Below, piece after piece: positions 1,313-33,807 of a stretch of 64,000 bases of DNA (the first letter of the stretch is position 1; each line of letters opens with the position of its first letter). Below the pieces are notes generated by a model, which did no database searches, was not told the origin of the DNA, and was given only the letters and a program-made list of their open reading frames with translations. The position numbers and the translations under genes were made by a program. This DNA comes from Malacoraja senta (Eukaryota): assembly GCA_038087875.1 (NCBI GenBank), contig JAXLNO010003629.1, positions 62,001 through 126,000 on the forward strand, in the 5' to 3' direction.

Positions 1313-1370
1313 GTCCATTCTGAGCTCTGGGCTGTTTCGCTTCCTATTTTTTATCTCAACTAAATTTCGA

Positions 1371-5514: not shown

Positions 5515-8500
5515 ATAACCATATAACCATATAACCATTACAGCACGGAAACAGGCCATCTCGGCCCTTCAAGTCCGTGCCGGATTTAAAAAAAAAAAAA
5601 AATACTACCCCCTAGTCCCATCTACCTGCACTCAGACCATAACCCTCCATTCCTTTCCTGTCCATATACCCATCCAATCTATTTTTAAAGTATAAAATCG
5701 AACCACCCTCCACCACTTCCACTGGAAGATCATTCCCTACAGCTACCACTCTCTGAGTAAAGATGTTCCCCCTAATGTTACCCCTAAACTTCTGTCCCTT
5801 AATTCTTGTCATGTCCCCTTGTTTGAATCTTCCCTACTCTCAATGGAAATAGCTTATCCACGTCAACTCTGTCTATCCCGCTCATAATTTTAAAGACCTC
5901 TATTAAGTCCCCTCTTAACCTTCTGCGCTCCAAAGAATAAAGACCTAACTTGTTCAACCTTTCTCTGTAACTTAGTTGCTGAAACCCAGGCAACATTCTA
6001 GTAAACCTCCTCTGTACTCGCTCTATTTTGTTGACATCCTTCCTATAATTAGGCGACCAAAATTGTACTCCATACTACAGAATTGGCCTCACCAATGCCT
6101 TGTACAATTTTAACATTACATCCCAACTTCTATATTCAATGCTCTGATTTATAAAGGCCAGCACACCAAAAGCTTTCTTTAACATGAGATTCCACCTTCA
6201 GGGAACTATGCACAGTTATTCCTAGATCCCTCTGTTCAACTGCATTCCTCAATTCTCTACCATTTACCATGTACGTCCTATTTTGATTTGTCCGGCCGAG
6301 ATGTTGTACCTCACATTTATCAGCATTAAACTCCATCTGCCATCTTTCAGCCCACTCTTCCAAATGGCCTAAATCTCTCTGTAGACTTTGAAAATCTACT
6401 TCATTATCCACAACACCACCTATCTTAGCATCATCTGCATACTTACTAATCCAATTTACCACACCATCATCCAGATCATTGATGTATATGACAAACAACA
6501 GTGGACCCAACACAGATCCCTGAGGCACCCCACTAGTCACCGGCCTCCAACCTGACAAACAGCCATCCACCATTACTTTCTGGCATCTCCCATTCAGCCA
6601 CTGTTGAATCCATCTTGCTACTCCACAATTAATACCCAACAATTGAATCTTCTTAACCAACCTTCCATGAGGAACCTTGTCAAAGGCCTTACTGAAGTCC
6701 ATATAGACAACATCCACTGCTTTACCCTCATCAATTTCCCGAGTAACCTCTTCAAAAAATTCAAGAAGATTAGTCAAACATGACCTTCCAGGCACAAATC
6801 CATGTTGACTGTTCCTAATCAGACCATGTTTATCCAGATGCTTATATATATTATCTCTAAGTATCCTTTCCATTAATTTGCCCACCACTGACGTCAAACT
6901 AACAGGTCTATAATTGCTAGGTTTACTCTTAGAACCCTTTTTAAACAATGGAACAACATGCGCAGTACGCCAATCCTCCGGCACCACTCCCGTTTCTAAT
7001 GACATTTGAAATATTTCTGTCATAGCCCCTGCTATTTCTACACTAACTTCCCTCAATGTCCTAGGGAATATCCTGTCAGGACCTGGAGACTTATCCATTT
7101 TTATATTTTTCAAAAGTGTCAGTACTTCCTCTTCTTTGATCCTCATAGTTTCCATTGCTACTCTACTTGTTTCCGTTACCTCACATAATTCAATATCCTT
7201 CTCCTTGGTGAATACCGAAGAAAATACATTGTTCAATATCTCCCCCATCTCTTTTGGCTCTGCAGATAGCTGTCCACTCTGACTCTCTAATGGACCAATG
7301 TTATCCCTCGTTCTCCTTTTGCTATTAATATGGCTGTAGAAACCCTTTGGATTTACTTTCACCTTACTTGCCAAAGCAACCTCATATCTTCTTTTAGCTT
7401 TTCTAATTTCTCTCTTAAGATTATTTTTACATTCTTTATACTCTTCAAGCACCTCATTTACTCCATGCTGCCCATAATTATTGTAGATATCTCTCTTTTT
7501 CCGAACCGTGTCCAATTTCCCTTGAAAACCATGACTCTTTCCAATTATTACTCTTTCCTTTCAACCGAACAGGGACATAAAGATTCTGTACTCTTAAAAT
7601 TTCACCTTTAAATGTCCTCCATTTCTCTATTACATCCTTCCCATAAAACAAAATGCCCAATTCACTCCTTTTAAATCCTTTCGCATCTCCTCAAAGTTAG
7701 CCTTTCTCCAATCAAAAATCTCAACCCTTGGTCCAGTTCTGACCTTCTCCATAATTATATTGAAACTAATGGCATTATGATCACTGGATCCAAAGTGCTC
7801 CCCAACACATACTTCTGTCAACTGACCTGTCTCATTTCCTAACAGGAGGTCCAGCACTGCCCCTTCTCTAGTAGATACCTCTATGTATTGCTGCAAAAAA
7901 CTATCCTGCACACATTTTACAAACTCCAAACCATCCAGCCCTTTTACAGAATGTGTTTCCCAGTCTATTTGTGGAAAATTGAAATCTCCCACAATCACTA
8001 CCTTGTCCTTACTACTAATATCTGCTATCTCCTTACATATTTGCTCTTCCAATTCTCGCTCCCCATTAGGCGGTCTATAATACACCCCTATAAGTGTTGC
8101 TACACCTTTCCCATTTCTTTGTTCCACCCAAATAGCCTCCATAGACGAGCCCTCTAATCTATCCTGCCAAAGCACTGCTGTAATATCTTCCCTGACTAGC
8201 AATGCAACACCTCCACGTCTTGCCCCTCCAATTCTATCACACCTGAAGCAATGAAATCCTGGAATATTTAGTTTCCAATCACAGCCATCCTGCAACCATG
8301 TTTCACTAATCGCCACAACATCATACTTCCAGGTGTCAATCCAGGCTCTAAGCTCATCCACCTTTCTTACAATGCTCCTAGCATTAAAATAGACACATTT
8401 AATAATAATAATAATAATAATAATGGATGAGATTTATATAGCGCCTTTCTAATACTCAAGGCGCTTTACATCACATTATTCATTCACTCCTCAGTCACAC

Positions 8501-9371
8501 TCGGTGGTGGTGAGCTACTTCTGTAGCCACAGCTGCCCTGGCGCAGAGTGACGGAAGCGTGGCTGCTAATCTGCGCCTACGGCCCCTCCGACCACCACCA
8601 ATCACTCACACACATTCACACACATTCACACGCAGGCAAAGGTGGGTGAAATGTCTTGCCCAAGGACACAACGACAGTATGCACTCCAAGCGGGATTCGA
8701 ACCGGCTACCTTCCGGTTGCCAGCCGAACACTTAGCCCATTGCGCCATCTGCCACCACCACTTATTTTCTTTTTATTATCTTTTTCTCCTTTCCCCCCTA
8801 CATGTTGGGTCTGAGTGCTTCCCTTCTCTGCCTCCTGCCTCACACACTGTCTACTAGCTTTCTCTATTTGAGTCCCTCCCCCCAACCACTCTAGTTTAAA
8901 GTCTCCCCAGTAGCCTTTGCAAATCTCGCCGCCAGGATATTTGTTCCCCTCGGGTTCAAGTGCAACCCGTCCTTTTTGTACAGGTCACACCTTCCCCAAA
9001 AGAGGTCCCAATGATCCAGTAACTTGAATCCCTGCCCTCTGCACCAGTCCCTCAGCCACAAATTTATCCTCCACCTCACCCCATTCCTACTCTCACTGTC
9101 GCGTGGCACAGGCAGTAATCCTGAGATTGTTACTTTTGCGGTCCTTCTCCTTAACTCTCTTCCTAAATCCCTAAATTCTCCTTTCAGGACCTCTTCTATT
9201 TTCTCCCTATGTCATTGGGACCTATATGTACCACGACCTCAGGCTCCTCTCCCTCCCATTTCAGGATATCTTGGACACGTTCAGACACATCCCAGACCCT
9301 GGCACCAGGGAGGCAAACTACCATCTGGGTCTCCTGACTGCGTCCACAGAATCGCCTATCTGATCCTTAGT
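5515..9371 (-). mobile_element. CR1 LINE family B, near full length: ORF1 SGNH-esterase-like remnant, APE endonuclease, RT
   Basis: DGLHLN (ORF1), SETWL/YRPP/GDFN/SDHN (APE), KYADD (RT); interrupted by a SINE at 8401-8757. Confidence 0.92.
8401..8757 (-). mobile_element. tRNA-derived SINE with L2-type 3' end and (ATT)n tail
   Basis: Minus strand has A-box TGGCGCAATGG, B-box GGTTCGAATCCC, an internal GTGTCCTTGGGCAAGACA block and a GTAAAGCGCCTTGAG...AAAGGCGCTATATAAAT 3' stem; absent from the right-arm copy at about 26200. Confidence 0.85.
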
Positions 9372-9789
9372 GGGCAAGGAGAACAAAACAGCACACAAGG
9401 GGTGGTGTCAGGAATATCCTGTAATATGGCAACAAGACATCTTGTTACTGTGCTCAAAAACTCCAGAAGAGAAGAGCAACAAATATCACTTGCCTACTTA
9501 CTGCATGCTGCATCACATGTCTGCTTTCAGTGATTAGTGCACAAAGACGCAGATATCTTTATCAATATTTCTGAATCAATCACAATTCCTATAGTTCTCA
9601 GTCTTTCTGTCTATACACAATATTATGGATAGGAAATGTATGGAGGGACATGGGTTAGGTGCAGGCAGTTGGGACTGGCTCAGATACACAACTTGGTCAG
9701 CATGTATGCATTGGGCCAATGGGCCTATTTCCATGCTGTACAGCTCTATGACTCTTTGCTGCATCTGTGTGTATATTTGGACACTAGCT

Positions 9790-11516
9790 CAACTGACTGG
9801 GAGGAGCCGGCCAAAGTTCACTGGAAAGATACACTAGCAGGGATGACGGTGGAACAAAAATGAAAGGTGTGTCTAGGAATAATACAGAAGGTGCAGGATC
9901 AGTTCATTCCTAGGAGGAAGAAAGATTCCAAGGGGAGAAAGGGATGAGACCATGGCTGACAAGGGACGTCAGGGACAGTATAAAAATTAAAGTGAAGAAG
10001 TACAACGTAGCAAAGATGAGCGGGAAGCAAGAGGATTGGGTAATGTTTAAAGAACCTCAGAAGATAACCAAAAAGACAATACGGGGAGAAAAGATGAGGT
10101 ACGAAGGTAAGCTAGCCAAGAATATAAAGCTGGATAGTAAAAGCTTCTTTAGGTATGTGAAGAGGATAATATTAGTTAAGACCAAAGTTGGACCCTTGTA
10201 GACTGAAAAAGGTGAATTTATTATGGGGAACAAGGAAATGGCAGATGAGTTGAACAGATACTTTGGATCTGTCTTCACTAAGGAGGACACAAACAATCTT
10301 CCTGATATAGCAGTGGCCAGAGGATCTGGGGTGACGGAGGAACTGAAGGAAATCCACATTAGGCAGGAAATGGTGTTGGATAGACTGATGGGACTGAAGG
10401 TTGATAAATCCCCAGGGCCTGATGGTCTGCATCCCAGGGTACTTAAGGATGTGGCTCTAGAAATCGTGGACGCATTGGTGGTAATTTTCCAATGTTCTAT
10501 AGACTCAGGATCAGTTCCTGTGGATTGGAGGGTAGCTAATGTTATCCCACTTTTTAAGAAAGGCGGGAGTGAGAAAACAGGGATTTATAGACCAGTTAGC
10601 CTGCCATCGGTGGTGGGGAAGATGCTGGAGTCAATTATGAAAGATGAAATAGCCGCACATTTGGATAGCAGTAACAGGATCGGTTCGAGTCAGCATGGAT
10701 TTACGAAGGGGAAATCATGCTTGACTAATCTTCTGGAATTTTTTGAAGATGTAACGAGGAAAATGGACAAGGGAGAGCCAGTGGATGTCGTGTACCTGGA
10801 CTTTCAGAAAGCATTTGAAAAGGTCCCACATAGGAGATTAGTGGGCATAATTAGGGCACATGGTATTGGGGGTAGAGTGCTGACATGGATAGAGAAGTGT
10901 TTGGCAGACAGGAAACAAAGAGTAGGGATTAACGGGTCCGTTTCAGAATGGCAGGCAGTGATTAGTTGGGTACCACAAGGCTCGGTGCTGGGACCGCAGC
11001 TATTTACAATATACATCAATGATTTGGATGAAGGGATTCAAAGTAACATTAGCAAGTTTGCAGAAGACACAAAGTTGGGTGGTAGTGTGAACTGTGAGGA
11101 GGATGCTATGAGAATGCAGGGTGACTTGGACAGGTTGGGGGAGTGGGCAGATGCATGGCAGATGAAGTTTAATGCAGATAAATGTGAGGTTATCCACTTT
11201 GGTAGCAAAAACAGCAAGGCTGATTACTATCTAAATGGCGTCAAGTTGGGAAAAGGGGAAGTACAACAGGATCTGGGGGTCCTTGTTCATCAGTCTATGA
11301 AAGTAAGCATGTAGGTACAACAGGCAGTGAAGAAAGCAAATGGCATGTTGGCCTTTATGACAAGAGGAGGAATATAGGAGCAAAGAGATCCTTCTGCAGT
11401 TGTACAGAGCCCTAGTGAGACCACACCTGGAGTATTGTGTGCAGTTTTGTTCCCCTAATTTGAGGAAGGACATTCTTGCTATTGAGGGAATGCAGCGTAG
11501 GTTTACAAGGTTAATT
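9790..11516 (+). mobile_element. CR1 LINE ORF2 fragment
   Basis: ORF 10223-11314 with complete RT motifs; mirrored by 20936-25365. Confidence 0.92.
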
Positions 11517-12275
11517 TGACGCAATTTAGATAGTAATCTGCCTTCCTGTTTTTGCTACCAAAGTGGATAACCTCACATTTATCCGCATTAAACTTCATCT
11601 GCCATGCATCTGCCCACTCCCCCAACCTGTCCAAGTCACCCTGCATTCTCATAGCATCCTCCTCACAGTTCACACTGCCACCCAGCTTTGTGTCATCTGC
11701 AAATTTGCTAATGTTCCTTTGAATCCCTTCATCCAAATCATTGATGTATATTGTAAATCGTTGCGGTCCCAGCACCGAGCCTTGCCGTACCCCACTAGTC
11801 ACTACCTGCCATTCTGAAAGGGACCCGCTAATCCCTATTCTTTGTTTCCTGTCTGCCAACCACTTCTCTATCCATGTCAGCACTCTACCCCCAATACCAT
11901 GTGCCCTAATTTTGCCCACTAATCTCCTATGTGGGACCTTATCAAATGCTTTCTGAAAGTCCAGGTACACTACATCCACCGGCTCTCGCTTGTCCATTTT
12001 CCTAGTTACATCCTCAAAAAATTCCAGAAGATTTAGTCAAGCATTATTTCCCTTTCGTAAATCCATGCTGACTTGGACCGATCCTGTTACTGCTATCCAA
12101 ATGTGCGGCTATCTCATCTTTTATAATTGACTCCAGCATCTACCCCACCACCGATGTCAGGCTAACTGGTGTATAATTCCCTGTTTTCTCTCTCCCGCCT
12201 TTCTTAAAAAGTGGGATAACATTAGCTAGCCTCCAATCCACAGGAACTGATCCTGAATCTATTGAACATTGGAAA
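11517..12275 (-). mobile_element. CR1 RT fragment fused tail-to-tail to the previous element
   Basis: ORF 11503-11997 with KFADD; mirrored by 20165-20935. Confidence 0.9.
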
Positions 12276-13550
12276 AAAAATAGAATCATTTGAAAGAATA
12301 ATAACATTAGCTTTATTCATTGGAAAGACTAAAATGAATTTGAATAGTCAAGAGAAACACCGCTATTTTAGATTTTAATCAGTCGGATGTAGCAAAAACA
12401 ATGACATGTGTCCCCTTTTTAGTGAAGACACCATCATTGTAATGGGAGAACACATTTCACAATAACATTTGAAGAAGTACATCAGTTTTGCAAACTACAT
12501 TTCAATCATTTAATCCCGTTCATTTAATCCACTATTACCAATGAAGAATAATGTCGGAAGTTTACTGACCTTCTGCAGAGGAACTTGTGTGGAATTCTGG
12601 AGAAGCAGCAACGTGGCTTTGAGCCCAGCACAGGACAAGCTGAGGCTCCCTCACACTGCACAGTAACTGACACTGCCTCTTGTCAAACTAAACGACACTC
12701 CCCCTCCAGCTCAGGTTTCCGGCACCACTGGTGTTGATACAAATGGGTTCAGATATAGAATTATACCACAAATAAAGATTCCATCTGGAATCGAACTTGC
12801 ACCTTTGCGGTTTTGAACATTTCGAATGGATCTCAAACGGGAGAGCTCCAGGTGCTTTGCCGCATCCTGCTGGGCCTGATGTTCCACGAGAGAGTACATG
12901 CAATCCAGGGATGTCCTGCCATTTCATGATGAAAAAACATCCATAGAGGGTTGTGTTCATTAAACATGCTGGCAATTCCATTACACCCATTAGGATAAAC
13001 TGAACCATTCCCGGGGAGAGGATTGGCCCTGGTGAAAGGAGAAAGAACATACTGTTTCCTGACTTGCCTCTTCATGGGAAGGAGCCCACAGATTTCACCA
13101 TGGGAAGCTTTCACTGTCCTAATGAATGCCCACCATCATTGGTCAGCTGAGCAAAATCTCAAATGACATTAAAAGAAGCAAGAGTACAGAGTGTACACTG
13201 GATGTGGACCTCAGCATCCATCATTGGGAGTGGCTTGGTCACACGACCACTCACTGAGATGGCTGAACCCTGAAGGATGTGTCTGCCAGGCTCTTTCTAC
13301 AGCAGGTAGAGAATGAGCCAATGACCTCCTCCTCTCCTGTCCACCTGCAACAGGTGAAACTGTTGACCATGGCTTTGGCAGAAATCAGAAGACCATTGCA
13401 CAGTTCTCATTGAGGACAATGTTTTGTCATTACACCAAAGTCGTCCCATATTGCTCTGACTGGCACAACAGTTTTTGATGTCATCTTCCCAAAGGAGCCG
13501 CAGAGGCTGATGCATTGACTATGTTCAAGGTAGAGGATGATTGACTATAA

Positions 13551-14088
13551 GGACTATGGAAGGACATTATAGCCATAGAGGGAGTGCAGAGAAGGTTCAC
13601 CAGACTGATTCCTGGGATGTCAGGACTTTCATATGAAGAAAGACTGGATAGACTTGGCTTATACTCGCTAGAATTTAGGAGATTGAGAGGGGAACTTATA
13701 GAAACGTACAAAATTCTTATGGGGTTGGACAGGCTAGATGCAGGAAGATTGTTCCCGATGTTGGGGAAGTCCAGGACAAGGGGTCACAGCTTAAGGATAA
13801 GGGGGAAATCCTTTAAGACCGAGATGAGGAAAAACTTTTTCACACAGAGAGTGGTGAATCTCTGGAACTCTCTGCCACAGAGGGTAGTTGAGGCCAGTTC
13901 ATTGGCTATATTTAAGAGGGAGTTAGATGTGGCCCTTGTGGCTAAAGGGATCAGGGGGTATGGAGAGAAGGCAGGTACGGGATACTGAGTTGGATGATCA
14001 GCCATGATCATATTGAATGGCGGTGCAGGCTCGAAGGGCCGAATGGCCTACTCCTGCACCTATTTTCTATGTCTCTATGTATCTATAA
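13551..14088 (+). mobile_element. Young CR1 family A 3' fragment, left-arm specific, TSD CTATAA
   Basis: CTATAA at 13545-13550 and 14083-14088; the empty site gactataaactcaac is present (as reverse complement) near 18875 in the other arm. Confidence 0.88.
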
Positions 14089-14369
14089 ACTCAACAGAAG
14101 TCAGAAGACGTGGAGAAAGTGGGAAGGTGGTGTTGAGACCAATATTGGATCAGCTGTATGAGCCTGAAAAATTGTGCTCCCTCAGACTTTATTCCTTGGA
14201 GTGCAGGAGGCTGAGATAGTTGAATTATTGAGGGGAATAGATAGACTGAATGAACAGAGCCTTTTACCCAGTGTGGGGGTATCAAGAACCAGAGTACACG
14301 GGTTTGAGGTGAGATGATAAGGTTTAATATGAACACGAAGGGCATCCTTTACATTCAAAGGATAAAGGA

Positions 14370-14990
14370 TTCAAACAAAAGGAGTTGAGTATAGAAGCAA
14401 AGAGGTCCTTCTGCAGTTGTACAGGGCCCTAGTGAGACCACACCTGGAGTATTGTGTGCAGTTTTGGTCTCCTAATTTGAGGAAGGACATTCTAGCTATT
14501 GAGGGAGTGCAGCGTAGGTTTACAAGGTTAATTCCCGGGATGACGGGACTGTCATATGCTGAGAGAATGGAGCGGCTGGGCTTGTATACTCTGGAGTTTA
14601 GAAGGATGAGAGGGAATCTTATTGAAACATATAATACTATTAAGGGTTTGGACACGCTAGAGGCAGGAAACATGTTCCTGATGTTGGGAGAATCCAGAAC
14701 CAAGGACCACAGTTTAAGAATAAGGGGCAAGCCATTTAGAACGGAGATGAGGAAAAACGTTTTCACACAGAGGGTTGTGAATATGTAGAATTCTCTGCCT
14801 CAGAGGGCGGTGGAGTCCGGTTCACTGGATGCTTTCAAGACAGAGCTAGATAGGGCTCTTGAAGATAGTAGAGTCAGGGCATATGGGGAGAAGGCAGGAA
14901 CAGGGTACTGATTGTGGATGATCAGCCATGATCACATTGAATGGCGGTGCTGGCTTGAAGGGCCGTATGGCCTACTCCTGCTCCTATTGT
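14370..14990 (+). mobile_element. CR1 3' fragment nested in an older CR1 relic (both arms)
   Basis: ORF 14417-14788 (LEYCVQFWSP); mirrored at 17978-18595. Confidence 0.85.
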
Positions 14991-17977: not shown

Positions 17978-18595
17978 CAATAGGTGCAGGAGTAGGCCAT
18001 ACGGCCCTTTAAGCCAGCACCGCCATTCAATGTGATCATGGCTGATCATCCACAATCAGTACCCTGTTCCTGCCTTCTCCCCATATCCCCTGACTCTACT
18101 ATCTTCAAGAGCCCTATCTAGTTCTCTCTTGAAAGCATCTAGTGAACCGGCCTCCACAACCCTATGAGGCAGAGAATTCCGCATATTCGCAACCCTCTGT
18201 GTGAAAAGGTTTTTCCTCATACCGGTTCTAAATGGCTTACCCCCTATTCTTAAACTGTGGTCCCTGGTTCTGGACTCTCACAACATCAGAAACATGTTTC
18301 CTGCCTCTAGCGTGTCCAAACCCTTAATAATCTTATAGGTTTCAATAAGATAACCTCTCATCCTTCTGAACTCCAGAGTATACAAGCCCAGCCGCTCCAT
18401 TCTCTCAGCATATGACAGTCCCGTCATCCCGGGAATTAACCTTGTAAACCTACGCTGCACTCCCACAATAGCAAGAATGTCCATCCTCAAATTAGGGGAC
18501 CAAAACTGCACACAATATTCCAGGTATGGTCTCACTAGGGCCCTGTAAAACTGCAGAAGGACCTCTTTGCTCCTATACTCAACTCCTCTTGTTTG
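17978..18595 (-). mobile_element. CR1 3' fragment (mirror of 14370-14990)
   Basis: ORF 18278-18535. Confidence 0.85.
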
Positions 18596-20164
18596 AATCT
18601 TTTATCCTTTAAATGTAAAGGATGCCTTTGGGTTCATATTAAACCTTATCATCTCTTATCAAATCCGTGTCCTCTGGTTCTTGATACCCCCACACTGGGT
18701 AAAAGGCTCTGTTCATTCAGCCTATCTATTCCCCTCAATAATTCAACTATCTCAGCCTCCTGCACTCCAAGGAATAAAGTCTGAGGGAGCACAATTTTTC
18801 AGGCCCATACAGCTGATCCAATATTGGTCTCAACACTACCTTCCCACTTTCCCCACGTCTCCTGACTTCTGTTGAGTTTATAGTCAATCATCCTCTACCT
18901 TGAACATAGTCAATGTTTCAGCCTCTGCAGCTCCTTTGGGAAGATGACATAAAAAACTGTTGTGCCAGTCAGAGCAATATGGGATGACTTTGGTGTAATG
19001 ACAAAACTTTGTCCTCAATGAGAACTGTGGAATGGTCTTCTGATTTCTGCCAAAGCCATGGTCAGCAGATTCACCTGTTGCAGGTGGACAGGAGAGGAGG
19101 AGGTCAAGTAGGTCATTCCCTTATGTTGGCTCATTCTCTACCTGCTGTAGAAAGAGCCTGGCAGACACATCCTTCAGGGTTCGGCCATCTCAGTGAGTGG
19201 TCGTGTGACCAAGCCATTCCCAATGATGGATGCTGAGGTCCACACCCAGTGTACACTCTGTATTCTTGCTTCTTTTAATGTCATTTGAGATTTTACTCAG
19301 CTGACCAATAATGGTGGGCATTCATTAGGACAGTGAAAGCTTCCCATAGTGAAATCTGTGGGCTCCTTCCCATGAAGAGGCAAGTGAGGAAACAGTATGC
19401 TCTTTCTCCTTTCACCAGGGCCAATCCTCTCTCCGGGAATGGTTCAGTTTATCCTAATGGGTGCAATGGAATTGCCAGCATGTTTAATGAACACAACCCT
19501 CTATGGAGGTTTTTTCATCATGAAATGTCAGGACCTCCCTGGATTGCATGTACTCTCTCGTGGAACATCAGGCCCAGCAGGATGCAGCAAAGCACCTGGA
19601 GCTCTCCCATTTGAGATCCATTCGAAATGTTCAAAATCCCAAAGGTGCAAGTTCGATTCCAGATGGAATCTTTATTTGTTGTATAATTCTATATCTGAAC
19701 CCATTTGTAACAACACCAGTGATGCCGGAAACCTGAGCTGGAGGGGGAGTGTCATTTAGTTTGACAAGAGGCAGTGTCAGTTACTGTGCAGTGTGAGGGA
19801 ACCTCAGCTTGTCCTGTGCTGGGCTCAAAGCCACGTTGCTGCTTCTCCAGAATTCCACACAAGTTCCTCTGCAGAAGGTCAGTAAACTTCAGACATTATT
19901 CTTCATTGGTAATAGTGGATTAAATGAACGGGATTAAATGATTGAAATGTAGTTTGCAAAACTGATGTTCTTCTTCAAATGTTATTGTGAAATGTGTTCT
20001 CCTATTACAATGATGGTGTCTTCACTAAAAAGGGAACAAATGTCATTGTTTTTGCTACATCCGACTGATTAAAATCTAAAATAGCGGTGTTTCTCTTGAC
20101 TATTCAAATTCATTTTATTCTTTCCAATGAATAAAGCTAATGTTATTATTCTTTCAAATGATTC

Positions 20165-20935
20165 TATTTTTTTTCCAATGTTCAATAGATTCAGGATCAG
20201 TTCCTGTGGATTGGAGGGTAGCTAATGTTATCCCACTTTTTAAGAAAGGCGGGAGAGAGAAAACAGGGAATTATAGACCAGTTAGCCTGACATCGGTGGT
20301 GGGGAAGATGCTGGAGTCAATTATAAAAGATGAGATAGCCGCACATTTGGATAGCAGTAACAGGATCGGCCCAAGTCAGCATGGATTTACGAAAGGGAAA
20401 CCATGCTTGACTAAATCTTCTGGAATTCTTTGAGGATGTAATTAGGAAAATGGACAAGCGAGAGCCAGTGGATATAGTGTACCTGGACTTTCAGAAAGCA
20501 TTTGATAAGGTCCCACATAGGAGATTAGTGGGCAAAATTAGGGCACATGGTATTGGGGGTAGAGTGCTGACATGGATAGAGAATTGGTTGGCAAACAGGA
20601 AACAAAGAGTAGGGATTAGCGTGTCCCTTTCAGAATGGCACGTAGTGACTAATGGGGTACGGCAAGGCTCGGTGCTGGGACCGCAACTATTTACAATATA
20701 CATCAATGATTTGGATGAAGGGATTCAAAGTAACATTAGCAAATTTGCAGATGACACAAAGCTGGGTGTCAGTGTGAACTGTGAGGAGGATGCTATGAGA
20801 ATGCAGGGTGACTTGGACAGGTTGGGGGAGTGGAGAGATGTATGGCAGATGAAGTTTAAAGCGGATAAATGTGAGGTTATCCACTTTGGTATCAAAAACA
20901 GGAAGGCAGATTACTATCTAAATTGCGTCAAATTA
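20165..20935 (+). mobile_element. CR1 RT fragment (mirror of 11517-12275)
   Basis: ORFs 20140-20433 and 20450-20944. Confidence 0.9.
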
Positions 20936-21216
20936 ACCTTATAAACCTACGCTGCATTCCCTCAATAGCAAGAATGTCCTTCCTCAAATTAGGGGACCAA
21001 AACTGCACACAATACTCCAGGTGTGGTCTCACTAGGGCTCTGTACAACTGCAGAAGGATCTCTTGCTCCTATATTGAACTCCTCTTGTTATAAAGGCCAA
21101 CATGCCATTTGCTTTCTTCACTGCCTGCTGTACCTATATGCTTACTTTCATAGACTGAAGAACAAGGACCCCCAGATCCCGTTGTACTTCCCCTTTTCCC
21201 AACTTGACGCCATTTA

Positions 21217-23950
21217 ATAGACTCTAATAGACAACATATTTACAAACAGTATGGACAACAGCATAAAGAGTGGGTTACTACTAAATGACATCAGTGACCA
21301 TCTGCCGGTTTTTGTAATGTTTGTTTGTAATTATGTTAAGTGTAAGGATGTTAATAAGATTAGATACAGGAGAGTAAGAACAGAAGAATCTATAAATAAA
21401 TTTAGAAATGTATTACTGACCCAAAATTGGAAACAGGTGTTTAAAGAGACTGATACCAACAAAGCGTATGAAACATTCTTGATAATATTTAAATCATTAT
21501 ATGATGAACACTGTCCTTTGAAACAACACAACAAGAAGCAGAAATATATAGTTAGGCCATTGATGACAAAAGGACTACAAAATGCATGCAAAAAAAAGAA
21601 TAACTTGTATAAAGAATTCATAAAATTCAGAACTATAGAAGCAGAAAGTAAATACAAAATATATAAAAACAAATTGACTAGTATTATGAGGACATGTAAG
21701 AAAGATTATTATAATAAAATATTAAACGATAATAAAAATAATATTAAGGGCATATGGAATGTGTTAAATAATATTATCAGGAATGCATCAATGAATATAA
21801 ACTACCCTCAGTATTTTGAAGACAATGATACAACTGTAAGCGATATGAAATATGTGGTTAATGGGTTTAACAAATTTTGGCAGAAGAAATCGATAATCCA
21901 CAGTCAGAAGAAGGAGAGGGGAAGGTTGTGGATTTGTTAGACAGCAACCCAAACTCAATGTTTTTGAAAGCAGCTGATGAATAGGAGATTATTGACATTG
22001 TTAGTAATTGTAAGAATAAAAGGTTTACAGACTGGAATGACATTGATATGGCTTTAATCAACGTAGTCATTGGTGTAATTGTAAAACCCTTAACTTATAT
22101 TTGTAATTTATCTTTCAAAACTGGTGTATTCCATGTAAAATGAAAACTGCCAAAGTCATCCCACTATACAAAGCTGGAGACAGAAATCAATTTACAAATT
22201 ACAGGCCGGTGTCGTTACTCTCTCAGTTCTCAAAAATATTAGAAAAACTGTATGTAAGTAGATTAGATAACTTTATCGAGAAGCACGAATTGCTAGTTGA
22301 TAGTCAATATGGATTCAGGTCAAACAGATCGACATCCATGGCATTAATGGAGTTAATTGAAGACATTACCAGTTCTATAGATAACAAGAAATATGCAGTG
22401 GGTGTATTTATAGATTTGAAAAAAGCATTCGATACTATTGATCATCATTTGCTAATCAAAAAACTGGAAAAGTATGGAATCAGAGGGGTTGTACTAGAGT
22501 GGATGAGAAGCTACATAAGTAAAAGACATCAGTTTGTGCAAATAGGGGACTGCAAATCAACATGCTTAGAAATAACTTGTGGAGTCCCACAGGGGTCGGT
22601 TTTGGGCCCCAAATTATTTATTTTGTATATTAATGATATATGTAGGGTGTCAAACCTCTTGAAATTTGTGTTATTTGCAGATGACACTAATATTTTCTGT
22701 GATGGGGACAATTTGCAGCAGCTTTTGGAGGTGGTCACAGCAGAAATTAGTAAATTAAAAACATGGTTTGATTTGAATAAATTATCATTAAATTTAAACA
22801 AAACCAAACTTATGCTGTTTGGAAAACGCAAAATAAATACACATGTAAAAGTAATGATAAATAATGTTGAAATAGAAAGAGTGTATGAAAATAAATTTCT
22901 GGGTGTGATTCTTGATCACAAAATCTGCTGGAAACCCCATATAAAACATGTGAGAGCAAAAGTAGCACGGAGTATTGGAGTGATGGGGAAAGCAAGGCAT
23001 GTTTTGAATGAGAGAGCACTGTATATTCTGTACAGCTCACTTGTGTTACCGTATTTAAATTACTGTGTGGAAGTATGGGGCAACACCTACAAAACCACCT
23101 TACAATCACTAAGCACACTACAAAAAAGAGCTATTCGTATAGTAAACAATGTAGGATATCAAGAACACACCAATATACTGTATTTAAAATTACACACCTT
23201 AAAGATTAAGGATCTGGTAGAATTTAAAACTCCACAAATAATTTATAAAGCAAAAAATAAACTGCTACCTGTAAACATACAAAAACTGTTCAAAGACAGA
23301 GAGGGGGGTTATAACTTTAGAGGGAAACTAAACTTGAAACAGCATTATGCTCGGACCAATTTAAAAAGTATGTGTATTTCCATTTGGGGGGTGGTTTTGT
23401 GGAATGGTCTTGACGAAACGATTAAACAAAGTATGAATATAATGCAATTTTAAAAAATGTACAAAAGATATATCTTTGAAAAGTACAGTAATGAGGAAGG
23501 AGAATGTAAATCTCACAGATGTTAATGGTGCTTGTTCTTTTTGTTCTTTTCTTTTTTTATTCTTTTTTTCTTAATTGCTTGATTGGAGTAGTTTTATTTG
23601 AATTGTCTGTTTAGTTTATTTTATTGAATTTTGCATTTGTTAATGGTGAAGAATGGGGGTAGGCCTTGACAAGCATAGGCTTCTTCCTATCCCTTTTCCA
23701 ACGTGTCTAATGTGTATTATGTTGAAATTGGCTTTTGATTTTTTAATTGATGTATGTACATATATGTTATGTATATGTGTATGTATGTATATATGTACAT
23801 GTATATGTATGTATGTGTGTATGTATTTATGTATATATATATGTATATATATAATTTTCCTTTATTTACTATGCATTTTCATCTATTCTTTTCTTCTTTT
23901 TTTAATCGTTCGAAATAAAAAGATATCAAATCAAATCAAATCAAATCAAA
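21217..23950 (+). mobile_element. AT-rich L2-group (Crack/Daphne-like) LINE, 5'-truncated within the endonuclease
   Basis: SDHLPVF (APE end), NYRPVSLL, DLKKAFDTIDH, GVPQGSVLGP, FADD; 3' UTR stem ggggtagg...cctatcccc, AATAAA and (TCAAA)n tail; TSD ATTTA at 21212-21216 and 23951-23955. The clade name is inferred. Confidence 0.85.
23750..23850. repeat. (TATG/TA)n low-complexity microsatellite in the Crack-like 3' UTR
   Basis: Visible alternating TA/TG run. Confidence 0.85.
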
Positions 23951-25800
23951 ATTTAGAAAGTAATCTGCCTTGCTGTTTTTGCTACCAAAGTGGATAACCT
24001 CACATTTATCTGCATTAAACTTCATCTGCCATGCATCTGCCCACTCTCCCAACCTGTCCAAGTCACCCTGCATTCTCATAGCATCCTCCTCACAGTTCAC
24101 ACTGCCACCCAGCTTTGTGTCATTTGCAAATTTGCTAATGTTACTTTGAATCCCTTCATCCAAATCATTGATGTATATTGTAAATAGCTGCGGTCCCAGC
24201 ACCGACCCTTGCGGTACCCAACTAGTTACTGCCTGCCATTCTGAAAGGGACCCGTTCATCCCTACTCTTTGTTTCCTGTCTGCCAAACACTTCTCTATCC
24301 ATGTCAGCACTCTACCCCCAATGCCATGTGCCCTAATTGTGCCCACTAATCTCCTATGTGGGACCTTATCAAATGCTTTCTGAAAGTCCAGGCACACAAC
24401 ATCCACTGCCTCTCCCTTGTCCATTTTCCTAGTTACATCTTCAAAAAATTCCAGAATATTAGTCAAGCATGATTTTCCCTTCGTAAATCCATGCTGACTT
24501 GGACCGATCCTGTTAATGCTATCGAAATGTGCGGCTATTTCATCTTTCATAATTGACTCCAGCATCTTCCCCACCAACGATGTTTGGCTAACTGGTCTAT
24601 AATTCCCTGTTTTCTCTCACGCCTTTCTTAAAAAGTGGGATAACATTAGCTACCTTCCAATCCACAGGAACTGATCCTGAGTCTATAGAACATTGGAAAA
24701 TTACCACCAATGCATCCACGATTTCTAGAGCCATTTCCTTAAGTACCCTGGGATGCAGACCATCAGGCCCTGGGGATTTATCAGCCTTCAGTCCCATCCA
24801 TCTATCCAACACCATTTCCTGCCTAATGTGGATTTCCTTCAGTTCCTCCGTCACTCCAGATCCTCTGGCCACTACTATATCAGGAAGATTGTTTGTGTCC
24901 TCCTTAGTACCTGTTCAACTCATCTGCCATTTCCTTGTTCCCCATAATAAATTCACCTTTTTCAGTCTACAAGGCTCCAACTTTGGTCTTAACTAATTTT
25001 TTCCTCTTCACATACCTAAAGAAGCTTTTACTATCCTGCTTTATATTCTTGGCTAGCTTACCTTCGTACCTAATCTTTTCTCCCCATATTGTCTTTTTGG
25101 TTATCTTCTGTTGTTCTTTAAACATTACCCAATCCTCTTGCTTCCCGCTCATCTTTGCTACGTTGTACTTCTTCGCTTTAATTTTTATACTGTCCCTGAC
25201 GTCCCTTGTCAGCCATGGTTGTCCCTTTCTCCCCTTGGAATCTTTCTTCCTCCTAGGAATGAACTGATCCTGCACCTTCTGTATTATTCCTAGAAATACC
25301 TGCCATTTTTGTTCCACTGTCATCCCTACTAGTGTATCTTTCCAGTCAACTTTGGCCGGCTCCTCCTAGTCAGTTGAGCTAGTGTCCAAATATACACACA
25401 GATGCAGCAAAGAGTCATAGAGCTGTACAGCATGGAAATAGGCCCATTGGCCCAATGCATACATGCTGACCAAGTTGTGTATCTGAGCCAGTCCCAACTG
25501 CCTGCACCTAACCCATGTCCCTCCATACATTTCCTATCCATAATATTGTGGATAGACAGAAAGACTGAGAACTATAGGAATTGTGATTGATTCAGAAATA
25601 TTGATAAAGATATCTGCGTCTTTGTGCACTAATCACTGAAAGCAGACATGTGATGCAGCATGCAGTAAGTAGGCAAGTGATATTTGTTGGTCTTCTCTTC
25701 TGGAGTTTTTGAGCACAGTAACAAGATGTCTTGTTGCCATATTACAGGATATTCCTGAGACCACCCCTTGTGTGCTGTTTTGTTCTCCTTGCCCACTAAG

Positions 25801-28800
25801 GATCAGATAGGAGATTCTGTGGACGCAGTCAGGAGACCCAGATGGTAGTTTGCCTCCCTGAGAGTAGGAATGGGGTGAGGTGTAGGATAAATTTGTGGCT
25901 GAGGGACTGGTGCAGAGGGCAGGGATTCAAGTTTCTGGATCATTGGGACCTCTTTTGGGGAAGGTGTGACCTGTACAAAAAGGACGGGTTGCACTTGAAC
26001 CCGAGGGGAACCAATATCCTGGCGGCGAGATTTGCAAAGGCTACTGTGGAGAGTTTCAGCTAGAATGGTTGGGGGGAGGGACTCAAATAGAGAAAGCTAG
26101 TAGACTGTGTGTGAGGCAGGAGGCAGAGAAGGGAAGCACTCAGATCCAACGTGGAGGGGAGAATGAAGAAAAAGATAATAAACAGAGAATAAGTGGTGGT
26201 GGGTTTCTTAAATGTGTATATTTAAATGCTAGGAGCATTGTAAGAAAGGTGGATGAGCTTAGAGCCTGGATTGACACCTGGAAGTATGATGTTGTGGCGA
26301 TTAGTGAAACATAGGTGCAGGATGGCTGTGATTGGAAACTAAAAATTCCAGGATTTCGTTGCTTCAGGGGTGATAGAATTGGAGGGGCAAGTGGTAGGGG
26401 TGTTGCATTGCTTGTCAGGGAAGATATTACAGCAGTGCTTTGGCTGGATAGATTAGAGGGCTCGTCTAGGGAGGCTATTTGGGTGGAACAAAGAAATGGG
26501 AAAGGTGTAGCAACACTTATAGGGGTGTATTATAGACCGCCTACTGGGGAGCAAGAATTGGAAGAGCAAATATGTAAGGAGATAGCAGATATTAGTAGTA
26601 AGCACAAGGTAGTGATTGTGGGTGATTTCAATTTTCCACACATAGACTGGGAAACACATTCTGTAAAAGGGCTGGATGGTTTGGAGTTTGTAAAATGTGT
26701 GCAGGATAGTTTTTTGCAGCAATACATAGAGGTACCTACTAGAGAAGGGGCAGTGCTGGACCTCCTGTTAGGAAATGAGACAGGTCAGGTGGCGGAGGTA
26801 TGTGTTGGGGAGCACTTCGGGTCCAGTGATCACAATACCATTAGTTTCAATATAATTATGGAGAGGGTCAGAACTGGACCTAGGGTTGAGATTTTTGATT
26901 GGAGAAAGGCTAACTTTGAGGAGATGCGAAAGGATTTAAAAGGAGTGAATTGGGACATGTTGTTTTATGGGAAGATGTAGTAGAGAAATGGAGGACATTT
27001 AAAGGTGACATTTTAAGAGTACAGAATCTTTATGTCCCTGTTCGTTTGAAAGGAAAGAGTAATAATTGGAAAGAGCCATGGTTTTCAAGGGAAGTTGGAC
27101 ACGGTTCAAAAAAAGAGAGAGATCTACAATAATTATAGGCAGCATGGAGTCAATGAGGTGGTTGAAGAGTATAAAGAATGTAAAAAGAATCTTAAGAGAG
27201 AAATTAGAAAAGCTGAAAGAAGATATGAGGTTGCTTTGGCAAGTAAGGTGAAAGTAAATCCAAAGGGTTTCTACAGCTATATTAATATAAAAGGATAACG
27301 AGGGATAAAATTGGTCCATCAGAGTGTCAGAGTGGACAGCTATCTGCAGAGCCAAAAGAGATGGGGGAGATATTGAACAACTTCTTTTCTTCGGTATTCA
27401 CCAAGGAGAAGGATATTGAATTATGTGAGGTAAGGGAAGCAAGTAGGGTAGCTATGGAAACAAGAGGATCAAAGAAGAGGAAGTACTGACACTTTTGAAA
27501 AATATAAAAATGGATAAGTCTCCAGGTCCTGACAGGATATTCCCTGGGACATTGAGGGAAGTTAGTGTAGAAATAGCAGGGGCTATGACAGAAATATTTC
27601 AAATGTCATTAGAAAAAGGAATAGTGCCGGAGGATTGGCGTACTGCGCATGTTGTTCCATTGTTTTAAAAGGGTTCTAATAGTAAACCTAGCAATTATAG
27701 ACCTGTTAGTTTGATGTCAGTGGTGGGCAAATTAATGGAAAGGATACTTAGAGATAATATATATAAGCATCTGGATAAACAGGGCCTGATTAGGAACAGC
27801 CAACATGGATTTGTGCCTGGAAGGTCATGATTGACTAATCTTCTTGAATTTTTTGAAGAGGTTTCTAGGGAAATTGATGAGGGTAAAGCGGTGGATGTTG
27901 TCTATATGGACTTCAGTAAGGCCTTTGACAAGGTTCCACATGGAAGGTTGGATAAGAATTATTGGGTATTAATAGTGGAGTAGCAAGATGGATTCAACAG
28001 TGGCTGAATGGGAGATACCAGAGAGTAATGGTGGATAACTGTTTGTCAGGTTGGAGGCCGGTGACTAATGGGATGCCTAAGGGGTCTGTGTTGGGTCCAC
28101 TGTTGTTTGTCATATACATCAATGATCTGGATCATGGTGTGGTAAATTGGATTAGTAGGTATGCAGATGATACTAAGATAGGTGGTGTTGTGGATAATGA
28201 AGTAGATTTTCAAAGTCTACAGAGAGATTTAGGCCATTTGGAAGAGTGGGCTGAAAGATGGCAGATGGAGTTTAATGCTGATAAGTGCGAGGTGCTACAT
28301 CTTGGTAGGACAAATCAAAATAGGACGTACATGGTAAATGGTAGCGAATTGAGGAATGCAGTAGAACAGAGGGATCTAGGAATAACTGTGCATAGTTCCC
28401 TGAAGTTGGAATCTCATGTAGATACGGTGGTAAAGAAAGCTTTTTGTGGGCTGGCCTTTATAAATCAGAGCATTGAATATAGAAGTTGGGATGTAATGTT
28501 AAAATTGTACAAGGCATTGGTGAGGCCAATTCTGGAATATGGTGTACAATTTTGGCCACCAAATTATAGTCAACAAAATAGAGAGAGTACAGAGGAGATT
28601 TACTAGAATGTTGCCTGGGTTTCAGCAACTAAGTTACAGAGAAAGGTTGAACAAGTTAGGTATTTATTCTTTGGAGCGCAGAAAGTTAAGGGGGGACTTG
28701 ATAGAGGTCTTTAAAATGATGAGAGGGATAGACAGAGTTGATGTGGATAAGCTTTTTCCATTGGGAGTAGGGAAGATTCAAACAAGGGGACATGACTTGA

Positions 28801-29065
28801 GAATTAAGGGACAAAGGTTTAGGGGAAACATGAGGTGGAACCTCTTTACTCAGAGAGTGGTAGCTGTGTGAAATGAGCTTCCAGTGGAAGTGGTGGATGC
28901 AGGTTCGATTTTATCATTTAAAAATAAATTGGATAGGTATATGGATGGGAAAGGAATGGAGGGTTATGGTCTGAGTGCAGGTAGATGGGGCTAGGTGAGA
29001 GTACGTTTTCGGCACGGACTAGAAGGGCCGAGATGGCCTGTTTTCATGCTGTAATTGTTATATTA
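25801..29065 (+). mobile_element. CR1 family B element (mirror of 5515-9371)
   Basis: Same 5' junction as the left arm; ORF1 DGLHLN, APE and RT motifs with stops and frameshifts. Confidence 0.92.
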
Positions 29066-29574
29066 TATACCCGAGAACGGGTTTTCCTGCCACAGAAGGA
29101 ATTCAGCCAAACTGACCAGACTGATTCTTGGAATGGCAGGGCTAACGTGTGAGGAGAGGAGGAGCCACTGGGCCAGTAGTCACTGGAGTTTGGAAGACAT
29201 GAACGGGACCTCACTAAATCAAACAAAATTCAGGCAGAGCGAGACAAACCCCAGGTGTAAGGATTTTTTTCGGCGACTGGAGGATCTAGAACTAGAGGTC
29301 GCAGACTTAAGACCTGAAGGGCTGAGATGTGGAAAAATGTCTTCATTCTGAATATAGTGAGCCTTTAAAATTCACCCCATGGAAAAAATGGTAGATGACT
29401 AGTAAATGAATCCAGTTAAGTAGCGGATAGGTTTTTTATTGACACAAATGGCATCAATGATTATAGGGAGAGAATTGTAATATGGGGTTGACAGAGAAGG
29501 TTGTGTTGAATGACGGAACGGGCTCAATGTGCCAAATAATCCATTTCTGCTCCTCTTTTGCATGTTTCAATAAG

Positions 29575-31290: not shown

Positions 31291-31367
31291 CAATAAGGTT
31301 TTGTGATGGGTTGATCTTTTCTTTGCCCTTCACACCTCTGCTGCCTATTTCACGTTGTGAAATTTAG

Positions 31368-33480: not shown

Positions 33481-33719
33481 GAACAGAAGTATTGCAATTG
33501 AAGTTTTATCTTTAGAAACAAAATAGACACTTCCTCAATCTTACATTCAATGGCCTTAGCATTGAAGGCAAGCATACCATACGCCTTCTTCACTACCCTA
33601 ACTACTTATGCTGCCACTTTCCGTGAGCTATCAACGTGGACTCCAAATGCACTGAAGATATGTGTCTCAAACTGGCTCAGTCTAAAATTCTATGTTTTTT
33701 CCCACAGGGAATCCACAAA

Positions 33720-33807
33720 ATGAGGCCCTGGTTTTTCTGCAGCAGTTTGCCAGCTGGTTTGATGTTCAGTGTCTTTGTTTTCCTGCTTCGACCTGTTTCC
33801 ACACAGA
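33720..33807 (+). CDS. Leader (signal peptide) exon MRPWFFCSSLPAGLMFSVFVFLLRPVSTQ
   Basis: Acceptor ttttttcccacag| at 33707, 12-nt UTR, ATG with A at -3, hydrophobic core LMFSVFVFLL, consensus phase-1 donor A|GTAAGT at 33808; joins in frame to the exon at 38174. Confidence 0.7.

What the first reader, a model, noticed from the sequence alone, without database searches (positions are those of the whole stretch)
5515..29065. ~23.5 kb inverted segmental duplication (giant imperfect palindrome) directly upstream of the Ig receptor gene
Seen: the two arms share order, unique sequence and exact TE junctions in reverse complement around a 1694-bp spacer (15637-17330). A 270-bp sample showed about 14 differences, and the arms carry arm-specific insertions, so it is not a simple assembly mirror. 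Established: large palindromes promote gene conversion, inversion polymorphism and copy-number change, often at immune or amplified loci. Inference: the leader exon has a splice acceptor, so a non-coding first exon and promoter lie upstream, possibly within or next to the right arm and therefore duplicated in the opposite orientation.
Basis: partly seen in the sequence, partly recalled or inferred. Interest (0 to 1): 0.7.

Follow-up and report, generated by a model that had tools for sequence, protein, structure and literature searches.

The report
Old inverted duplication of junk DNA
A roughly 10-kb stretch of transposon-rich, gene-free DNA upstream of a skate immune-receptor gene was copied once in reverse, most likely by a DNA-repair accident, and the two copies have drifted apart since, so the structure is real but ordinary.

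Summary
The palindrome is real.

- **Duplicated unit.** It is 5793-15636 / 17331-28813, with 8,708 aligned columns and 4.0% divergence. The outer 264 bp of each arm are only family-level copies of a LINE 3' tail (88.8% alike). The outer breakpoint therefore sits in a hybrid LINE.
- **Age.** Each arm has private retroposon insertions with target-site duplications. A smaller inverted repeat nested in both arms predates the event.
- **Content.** The arms hold LINE and SINE debris and non-coding DNA. No gene was found.
- **Other organisms.** Contigs of three related organisms carry the spacer but all stop matching at 17332, the inner edge of the right arm. Words across that junction occur only in two other organisms. 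The right arm is therefore probably the lineage-specific copy, joined with 2 nt of microhomology as in fold-back or template-switch repair.
- **Arm exchange.** The arms are not homogenised. One 444-bp tract is a candidate gene-conversion tract.
- **Gene link.** The right arm ends 4.66 kb from the receptor's ATG. A link to its promoter is untested.
- **Earlier notes.** This scan has already noted several similar inverted duplications elsewhere in this genome.

It is ordinary and of low interest.

The parts
5793..15636 (.). Left arm, truly duplicated unit (probable source copy)
   Evidence: collinear reverse-complement match to 17331-28813, 4.0% divergence over 8,708 aligned columns.
5529..5792 (-). 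Outer 264 bp of the left-arm LINE: 3' end with three 8-nt tail repeats. Alike to the right arm only at family level.
   Evidence: 88.8% to the right-arm tail, equal to unrelated copies at 614-963 and 40887-41314. Change point at 5793 (support interval 5739-6100).
15637..17330 (.). Single-copy spacer (fold-back loop). 15637-16410 is repeat-rich; 16411-17330 is unique.
   Evidence: for the exact edges. depth table: the unique part is present in all four organisms laid.
17331..28813 (.). Right arm, truly duplicated unit (probable derived inverted copy)
   Evidence: contigs of X3, X5 and X6 stop matching at 17332 and run on unlike the laid stretch for 30, 88 and 142 letters; junction words are held only by organisms A and K.
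28814..29063 (+). Outer part of the right-arm LINE tail. Probable remnant of a LINE already at the acceptor site, forming the outer half of the hybrid LINE.
   Evidence: it shares 6 sites and one indel state with copy 40887-41314, while the left tail shares them with copy 614-963. No site groups left with right.
5529..9400 (-). LINE in the left arm (endonuclease and reverse transcriptase ORFs). Its partner lies at about 25770-29063 on the + strand.
   Evidence: RVT_1 at 6136-7515 and Exo_endo_phos at 7630-8361; the 871-aa LINE ORF of 56543-59161 aligns along 8214-5624.
8406..8749 (-). Left-only short retroposon-like insert with a (TAA)n end
   Evidence: No clean target-site duplication. No tRNA found.
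9094..9305 (.). Present in the left arm only; read as a 212-bp deletion in the right arm at about 25860
   Evidence: protein-level matches to the LINE copy at 34032-34713 run across the edge at 9305/9306, so the piece belongs to the LINE.
13545..14082 (.). Left-only young LINE 3' fragment, inserted after the duplication
   Evidence: 6-nt target-site duplication CTATAA, with the empty site in the right arm at 18884; 99% alike to 56442-56970.
21217..23955 (+). Right-only LINE of another family, inserted after the duplication
   Evidence: RVT_1 at 22140-23453; (AAATC)n tail, target-site duplication ATTTA, empty site in the left arm at 11231.
10727..12033 (.). Older nested inverted repeat of a LINE reverse-transcriptase piece (10727-11247 vs 11513-12033). 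Its partner in the right arm is 20414-20924 vs 23950-24460.
   Evidence: 13 sites group the partner copies across arms and none conflict, so it predates the large duplication.
9355..9798 (.). Candidate arm-to-arm gene-conversion tract or mutational cold spot (partner 25368-25811)
   Evidence: at most 3 mismatches in 444 columns, permutation p=0.002; 1.9% divergence over 9306-9948.
33708..33807 (+). Leader exon of the neighbouring eight-Ig receptor gene (ATG at 33720), preceded by a pyrimidine tract and CAG. Not part of the palindrome.
Evidence: read directly.

Best explanation
This is a genuine, lineage-specific inverted segmental duplication made in one repair or replication accident of the fold-back / template-switch kind. 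It has been decaying neutrally since.

The proposed course is as follows. The ancestral order was left arm, spacer, then some other sequence. A break or collapsed fork arose just right of 17332. The free 3' end paired through 2 nt (AA against TT at 15635-15636) with the same strand 1.7 kb back. It then copied the left arm backwards for about 9.8 kb. That produced the right arm and left a 1,694-bp single-copy loop as the spacer. Synthesis left the arm inside a LINE 3' region. It rejoined the chromosome through homology with another copy of that LINE lying on the far side of the break, which produced a hybrid LINE at about 28813.

Shown here: the palindrome itself, its exact edges, the 4.0% divergence, the private insertions, the drop in identity in the outer 264 bp, the absence of the spacer/right-arm junction from contigs of three related organisms, and words from that junction in two others.

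Inferred: the direction of copying, the 2-nt microhomology, the homology-driven second junction, and the lack of function.
For: - **Architecture and edges:**
- **Divergence:** 4.0-4.2%, with CpG sites at 22% against 3.7% for other sites. There is no rate difference between the arms: 50 against 60 polarised changes, p=0.39.
- **Events after the duplication, private to one arm:** a LINE 3' fragment with target-site duplication CTATAA in the left arm, and a 2.7-kb LINE with target-site duplication ATTTA in the right arm.
- **Nested older inverted repeat shared by both arms:**
- **Inner junction:** contigs of X3 (record 11), X5 (record 20) and X6 (record 29) match the spacer at about 97-98% and all end their match at 17332. 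They carry 30, 88 and 142 further letters that fit nothing in the laid stretch.
- **Junction words:** an 80-nt query centred on that junction is held only by organism A (3 of 4 and 2 of 4 sampled words, two samples) and organism K (2 of 4). Organisms B to E hold none.
- **Depth:** over the unique inner arm it is about twice the spacer's in X1, and no more than the spacer's in X3, X5 and X6 (a crude measure).
- **Outer junction:** the identity change point is at 5793/28813, with 11.6% against 4.6% mismatches. In the outer part no site groups the two arms, while 6 sites and an indel group each arm with a different unrelated copy. Homology does not resume beyond the LINE tails.
- **Fit to the literature:** spacer size and 2-nt microhomology fall in the ranges reported for fold-back inverted duplications. 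These are spacers of 766-70,466 bp, microhomology of 2-8 bp, and hybrid LINE or Alu elements at some junctions (PMC3907307).
Against: - The arms differ by 4.0%. The window differs from organism D, which lacks the junction, by only about 2.4-3.1% in the few contigs shown. Under a strict clock the duplication would then look as old as, or older than, that split. The samples are small (13/550 and 14/451 differences), so the conflict is not significant.
- The letters that B, C and D carry beyond 17332 were not shown, so the ancestral right-hand neighbour is unknown.
- The relationships of organisms A to K are coded and unknown. Polarity rests on the coincidence of their break with the arm edge.
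- The junction search used only 4 sampled words.
- No contig bridging 15636/15637 was listed, so continuity of left arm and spacer in the other organisms is assumed.
- The hybrid LINE could equally result from later ectopic conversion of one tail.
Confidence: 0.62

Rival explanations
1. Two-step origin. The arm was duplicated earlier to a dispersed or differently arranged position. A later inversion or deletion in the window's lineage brought the two old copies into mirror arrangement and created the junction at 17331.
For: The arm divergence of 4.0% is not smaller than the divergence from organisms that lack the junction, which is 2.4-3.1% for X6. X3 shows two different contigs over 19237-19390 (records 14 and 15). 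These could be two paralogous copies.
Against: Depth over the unique arm parts in X3, X5 and X6 is no more than that of the single-copy spacer. The two X3 contigs have low depth and may be alleles. The arrangement with a 1.7-kb loop, 2-nt microhomology and a hybrid LINE is explained by one event. Two events need more coincidences.
Confidence: 0.13
2. The same single inverted duplication, but it originally ran to or beyond the LINE 3' end. The outer 264 bp of one arm were later overwritten by ectopic gene conversion from another LINE copy, and the flanks were replaced by later LINE insertions into the tails.
For: Each tail is followed directly by a different 5'-truncated LINE in the same orientation: 5516 down to about 4083 on the left, and 29109 to about 29570 on the right. 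This looks like tail-targeted insertion. The identity drop is confined to the repeat.
Against: Homology does not resume beyond those secondary LINEs. This model needs a conversion event plus loss of the flanks, where a hybrid junction explains both observations.
Confidence: 0.1
3. Assembly artefact: two haplotypes, or a mirrored contig, joined head to head.
For: Palindromes are a known failure mode of long-read assemblers. No raw long reads of the assembled individual could be laid.
Against: Divergence of 4% is far above allelic levels. There are four large arm-private events, two of them with target-site duplications. The window has no N or gap. There is a unique 1.7-kb spacer with sharp edges. 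R-arm-specific or junction words are present in two samples of organism A and in organism K.
Confidence: 0.03
4. Retrotransposition of a read-through transcript. A 10-kb RNA starting near the inner end and ending at the LINE 3' tail was reverse-transcribed and inserted nearby in inverted orientation (5' transduction).
For: The homology ends at a LINE 3' terminus with tail repeats in both arms.
Against: The last 264 bp, which should be the best-copied part, are no more alike than unrelated copies. No target-site duplication flanks either arm. The size is unusually large.
Confidence: 0.03
5. A functional palindrome. It could be a hairpin-RNA or piRNA source against the LINEs it contains, or a duplicated and inverted regulatory module for the receptor gene.
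For: LINE-rich inverted arms would form long double-stranded RNA if transcribed through. The leader exon has an acceptor-like site, so some upstream exon is plausible. Runs guessed to be RNA hold 8-14% of the words of 14100-18800, but this is expected from transposon transcripts.
Against: There is no conservation: the junction is absent from three related organisms. The arms decay at equal, neutral-looking rates. The ORF shared by both arms has 11 amino-acid changes in 120 residues. There is no Rfam match. No RNA data were laid.
Confidence: 0.05

Closest known systems
Fold-back inverted duplications with a single-copy spacer (human constitutional cases, Hermetz et al. 2014, PMC3907307)
   Same: Two inverted copies lie around a non-duplicated spacer of kilobase size: 1,694 bp here, against 766-70,466 bp in that study. 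A 2-nt microhomology is inferred at the spacer/inverted-copy junction. A hybrid LINE sits at a junction.
   Different: Here the event is small (about 10 kb against megabases), interstitial, fixed in a lineage and old. There is no terminal deletion, telomere healing or translocation. The hybrid repeat is at the far end of the inverted copy, not at the spacer junction.
Replication-based template-switch rearrangements (FoSTeS/MMBIR, DUP-TRP/INV-DUP; named from my own knowledge)
   Same: An inverted copy is inserted next to its source. One junction has microhomology and one is mediated by a repeat.
   Different: No triplicated segment is seen. The pre-existing inverted repeats that drive recurrent DUP-TRP/INV-DUP events are not evident at the inner junction.
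Gene-conversion-maintained ampliconic palindromes of primate sex chromosomes (from my own knowledge)
   Same: Large inverted arms around a short unique spacer.
   Different: Those arms stay above 99.9% identical, carry expressed genes and persist across species. Here the arms are 96% alike and gene-free, and the junction is missing from three related organisms.
Other inverted duplications noted in this same skate genome by this scan (s1-140391, s1-140237, s1-140450, s1-184357)
   Same: Same genome and same architecture (inverted arms with a short spacer). The follow-up agents judged most of them genuine repair accidents.
   Different: Those involve MHC, light-chain, IgM-flanking or Harbinger sequence. 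This one carries only LINE and SINE debris. I did not re-examine them.

Membership tests
Fold-back / template-switch inverted duplication | Two copies in inverted orientation separated by a non-duplicated spacer of about 0.7-70 kb | tested here: met
   Arms 5793-15636 and 17331-28813 with a 1,694-bp spacer that has no internal arm homology. Range taken from PMC3907307.
Fold-back / template-switch inverted duplication | The spacer/inverted-copy junction is new, meaning absent from the unrearranged state | tested here: met
   Contigs of three organisms (X3, X5, X6) end their match at 17332 and continue with unlike letters. Junction words are found only in organisms A and K. Polarity is inferred, because the relationships of the organisms are coded.
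Fold-back / template-switch inverted duplication | Short inverted microhomology (2-8 nt) or a hybrid repeat at that junction | tested here: inconclusive
   The contigs match 2 nt (AA) past the spacer edge. The template has TT at 15635-15636. Two nucleotides are also expected fairly often by chance.
Fold-back / template-switch inverted duplication | The second junction restores chromosome continuity (telomere, translocation or template switch back) | tested here: inconclusive
   A hybrid LINE is inferred from the identity change point at 5793/28813 and from the site patterns. Later ectopic conversion is not excluded.
Conversion-maintained ampliconic palindrome | Arm-to-arm identity near 99.9% through ongoing gene conversion | tested here: not met
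   Identity is 96.0%. Only one 444-bp tract stands out (p=0.002).
Conversion-maintained ampliconic palindrome | Arms carry intact, selected genes | tested here: not met
   Only RVT_1 and Exo_endo_phos ORFs of LINEs were found. The ORF shared by both arms is not conserved.
Assembly false duplication (haplotig mis-join) | Arms differ at allelic level, the junction lies at a gap, and no independent read support exists | tested here: not met
   Divergence is 4% with private transposon insertions. The window has no N. Junction words occur in runs of two other organisms. Long reads of the same individual were not available.
LINE-mediated transduction retrocopy | The copy ends in the LINE's own 3' tail and is flanked by a target-site duplication | tested here: not met
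   The tail is present, but the tails of the two arms are no closer than unrelated copies. No flanking direct repeat was found.
Hairpin-RNA / piRNA-producing inverted repeat | Transcription through both arms and small RNAs mapping to them | not testable with these tools
No listed holder is on record as RNA.

The most novel reading that the evidence does not exclude
The LINE-rich palindrome is transcribed through, perhaps from the receptor gene's upstream region. It would then fold into a roughly 10-kb hairpin that feeds small-RNA silencing of the still-active LINE family it contains. Alternatively, the inverted right arm supplies a new upstream exon or promoter to the eight-Ig receptor gene in this lineage only.
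Probability: 0.04. Interest if true: 0.5.

Novelty: new member of a known kind. Interest (0 to 1): 0.18.

Why it matters
It matters little for biology. It is one more neutral inverted segmental duplication in a repeat-rich skate genome that, by this scan's own notes, holds several. Three points have modest value.

1. Both breakpoints can be read. One has 2-nt microhomology at a 1.7-kb loop and one lies in a hybrid LINE. This is a clean natural example of fold-back or template-switch repair becoming fixed in a vertebrate lineage.
2. It shows that the DNA directly upstream of this immune-receptor gene was remodelled recently. That should be kept in mind when looking for the gene's promoter or comparing the locus between skates.
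3. The near-identical LINE tails at the arm ends illustrate how family-level repeat homology can inflate the apparent size of a duplication.

Tried and rejected
- **Orthologous contigs by protein search.** I searched the spacer ORF 16882-17268 to fetch orthologous contigs of other skates. There was no hit, so the letters beyond 17332 in organisms B, C and D stay unknown.
- **Rfam.** A scan of the whole window found nothing.
- **tRNA.** A search in the left-only insert 8406-8749 found nothing.
- **Target-site duplications around a whole arm (retrocopy idea).** None was found.
- **Resumption of arm homology beyond the secondary LINEs at both outer ends.** None was found with 9-nt words.
- **Excess of private changes in the right arm.** The nested repeat suggested 33 against 16. 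The excess disappeared with outgroup polarisation over the whole arms, at 60 against 50, p=0.39.
- **Site 19286/13161.** Both arms share a letter against all four organisms laid. It lies in a CpG context, so it is not usable as proof of conversion.
- **Coding potential of non-repeat parts.** Pfam gave nothing beyond LINE domains. The 120-aa ORF kept in both arms has 11 replacements.
- **Depth as copy number.** I used it only as a crude hint, because the tool warns against that use.
Full report
**Observation**

A seed-and-extend scan and a gapped self-alignment both show one collinear series of reverse-complement blocks:

| Left arm | Right arm | Identity |
|---|---|---|
| 5529-8405 | 29063-26205 | 93.3% |
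| 8752-9095 | 26202-25859 | 95.1% |
| 9306-11236 | 25860-23951 | 95.6% |
| 11227-13550 | 21220-18878 | 96.0% |
| 14083-15636 | 18883-17331 | 94.9% |

The window holds no N. A global alignment of the arms and direct reading of the edges place the inner ends at 15636 and 17331. Over 8,958 aligned columns the arms differ at 4.2% of sites (K2P 0.044). CpG sites differ at 22% and other sites at 3.7%.

**What the arms are made of**

Pfam finds reverse transcriptase and apurinic-type endonuclease domains in the long ORFs. Protein-level comparison with the LINE ORFs elsewhere in the window gives the following layout for the left arm, with the right arm mirroring it.

- 5529 to about 9400 is one LINE on the minus strand. 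Its 3' end carries three 8-nt tail repeats and lies at the outer edge of the arm.
- 9920-11516 and 12276-11512 are two pieces of another LINE's reverse transcriptase lying tail to tail.
- 14370-14994 is a LINE-tail family repeat.
- The rest has no other copy in the window. Where reads were laid it has low, single-copy-like depth.

No non-transposon domain was found. A 120-aa ORF kept in both arms has 11 replacements and so is not under selection. Rfam finds nothing. The arms are gene-free as far as these tools can see.

**A duplicated segment, not independent transposon copies**

The alignment blocks run across the borders between repeats and non-repeated DNA. The small inverted repeat nested inside each arm (10727-11247 vs 11513-12033, and 20414-20924 vs 23950-24460) gives 13 informative sites. 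All 13 group each copy with its partner in the other arm. That composite structure therefore existed before the large duplication and was copied whole.

**Events since the duplication**

- The left arm gained a 538-bp LINE 3' fragment at 13545-14082. It has the target-site duplication CTATAA and is 99% identical to 56442-56970.
- The left arm also gained a 344-bp short retroposon-like insert at 8406-8749, with a (TAA)n end and no clean target-site duplication.
- The right arm gained a 2,739-bp LINE of another family at 21217-23955. It has an (AAATC)n tail and the target-site duplication ATTTA.
- The right arm lost 212 bp (left 9094-9305). Matches to another copy show that this piece is internal to the LINE.

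Polarising 110 arm differences with other copies in the window shows no rate difference between the arms: 50 left-derived against 60 right-derived, p=0.39. All of this speaks for an old, neutrally decaying duplicate and against an assembly mirror.

**The outer edge**

Homology stops exactly at the 3' terminus of the LINE in both arms, which needs an explanation. In the outermost 264 bp the arms are only 88.8% alike. That is the same as either arm against unrelated copies of this tail at 614-963 and 40887-41314. In that stretch no site groups the two arms together. Six sites and an A-rich indel group the left tail with copy 614 and the right tail with copy 40887.

A likelihood change point lies at left 5793 / right 28813 (support interval 5739-6100). 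Mismatches run at 11.6% outside it and 4.6% inside it. Beyond the tails the flanks are unrelated, and each carries a different secondary LINE. Homology does not resume.

The simplest reading is that the real breakpoint is inside the LINE, and that one arm's LINE is a hybrid of the copied element and a resident copy of the same family. The truly duplicated unit is then 5793-15636 / 17331-28813, with 8,708 aligned columns and 4.0% divergence.

**Evidence from other organisms**

The index of public runs lists organism A as the best holder of 14100-18800, with 0.49 of the words. Organisms B to E hold about 0.33.

I laid contigs of X1 (organism A), X3 (B), X5 (C) and X6 (D) on 13400-19390. This was the only read-laying run allowed. 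The unique part of the spacer is present in all four, at roughly 97-98.5% identity. Three contigs that cover the spacer's right end all stop matching at 17332: X3 record 11, X5 record 20 and X6 record 29. They carry 30, 88 and 142 further letters that fit nothing in the laid stretch. In those three organisms the spacer is therefore not followed by the right arm.

An 80-nt query centred on that junction has 4 sampled words. Only organism A holds them (3 of 4 and 2 of 4, in two samples), along with organism K (2 of 4). Organisms B to E hold none.

Depth over the unique inner arm is about twice the spacer's in X1. It is no more than the spacer's in the other three. The tool warns that depth is not copy number, so I treat this as a hint only.

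Taken together, the junction at 17331 is a derived feature of the window's lineage together with A, and perhaps K. The right arm is the copy. The three contigs match two letters (AA) past the spacer edge, and the template strand has TT at 15635-15636. This gives a 2-nt microhomology at the junction.

**Mechanism**

These features fit a fold-back or template-switch event. They are a kilobase-sized single-copy loop, a microhomology junction at the loop, an inverted copy of the adjacent sequence, and a second junction made through repeat homology.

For human constitutional inverted duplications, Hermetz et al. report spacers of 766-70,466 bp and 2-8 nt of inverted microhomology. They also report hybrid LINE or Alu elements at some junctions (PMC3907307). 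The skate event differs in being small, interstitial and fixed.

The direction of copying, the microhomology and the homology-driven second junction are inferences. The structure, its edges and the absence of the junction from the laid contigs are observations.

**Age**

A divergence of 4.0% is about 2.5 to 3 times the window's difference from organism A in the spacer, which is about 13 fixed differences in about 930 nt. It is similar to, or somewhat above, its difference from organism D, at 13/550 in the arm and 14/451 in the spacer.

The last comparison sits uneasily with a duplication younger than the split from D. The counts are too small to reject it. This tension is the main support for the rival in which an older duplicate was later rearranged.

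An absolute date would need a skate substitution rate, which I did not verify. With a rate near 1e-9 per site per year, taken from general knowledge, the event would be on the order of 20 million years old.

**Gene conversion**

The arms as a whole are not homogenised. One tract, left 9355-9798, has at most 3 mismatches in 444 columns (permutation p=0.002). It may be a conversion tract or a mutational cold spot.

One site where both arms share a letter against all four organisms is in a CpG context, so it is not informative.

**Relation to the receptor gene**

I did not re-test that.

The ATG at 33720 lies 12 nt after a pyrimidine tract and CAG, so a spliced upstream non-coding exon is plausible. 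The right arm ends 4.66 kb upstream, and the interval between is mostly LINE fragments.

No RNA data could be laid. If the right arm is the newcomer, it was set down in front of an existing gene and did not bring that gene's original promoter.

**Verdict**

The structure is a real, lineage-specific inverted duplication of transposon-rich non-coding DNA, best explained by one fold-back or template-switch repair event. It belongs to a known kind, and this scan has noted several others in the same genome. Interest is low.

Noticed in passing
window 56540-59155 (-), with 13558-14086, 46450-46978, 56442-56970: There is an 871-aa open LINE ORF with endonuclease and reverse transcriptase domains. Its 3' fragments are 97-99% identical to one another, and one of them was inserted into the left arm after the duplication. 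This LINE family looks recently active.
   Followed up: partly
window 17052-17065 and spacer 15950-17250: Contigs of X1, X3 and X6 carry 48 letters where the window has 12. About 13 spacer sites differ from all four organisms laid. The window's genome is therefore not identical with any of them, at about 1.4% from the closest.
   Followed up: no
window 16031-16370: The spacer itself holds a small decayed palindrome (79% complementary) made of two LINE-tail fragments. A 33-nt inverted pair lies at 15912-15944 / 16167-16199.
   Followed up: no
window 492-1363 vs 29337-33267: The flanks outside the two arms share five short collinear matches in direct orientation (79-88%), interrupted by LINEs on the right side. 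This is probably an old repeat family, but an older direct duplication of the flanks is not excluded.
   Followed up: no
window 5793-15636 vs 17331-28813: Transitions and transversions between the arms are about equal: 180 against 175 in columns away from gaps. The window-private differences in the spacer look similarly rich in transversions. The cause is unexplained.
   Followed up: partly
window 44931-45110 and 60322-60635: Tandem repeats of 53 nt (3.4 copies, inside the receptor gene span) and of 74 nt (4.3 copies).
   Followed up: no
window 4083-5516 (-) and 29109-29570 (+): Each arm's LINE tail is followed directly by a different 5'-truncated LINE in the same orientation. This suggests that LINEs of this kind insert into existing tails.
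   Followed up: partly
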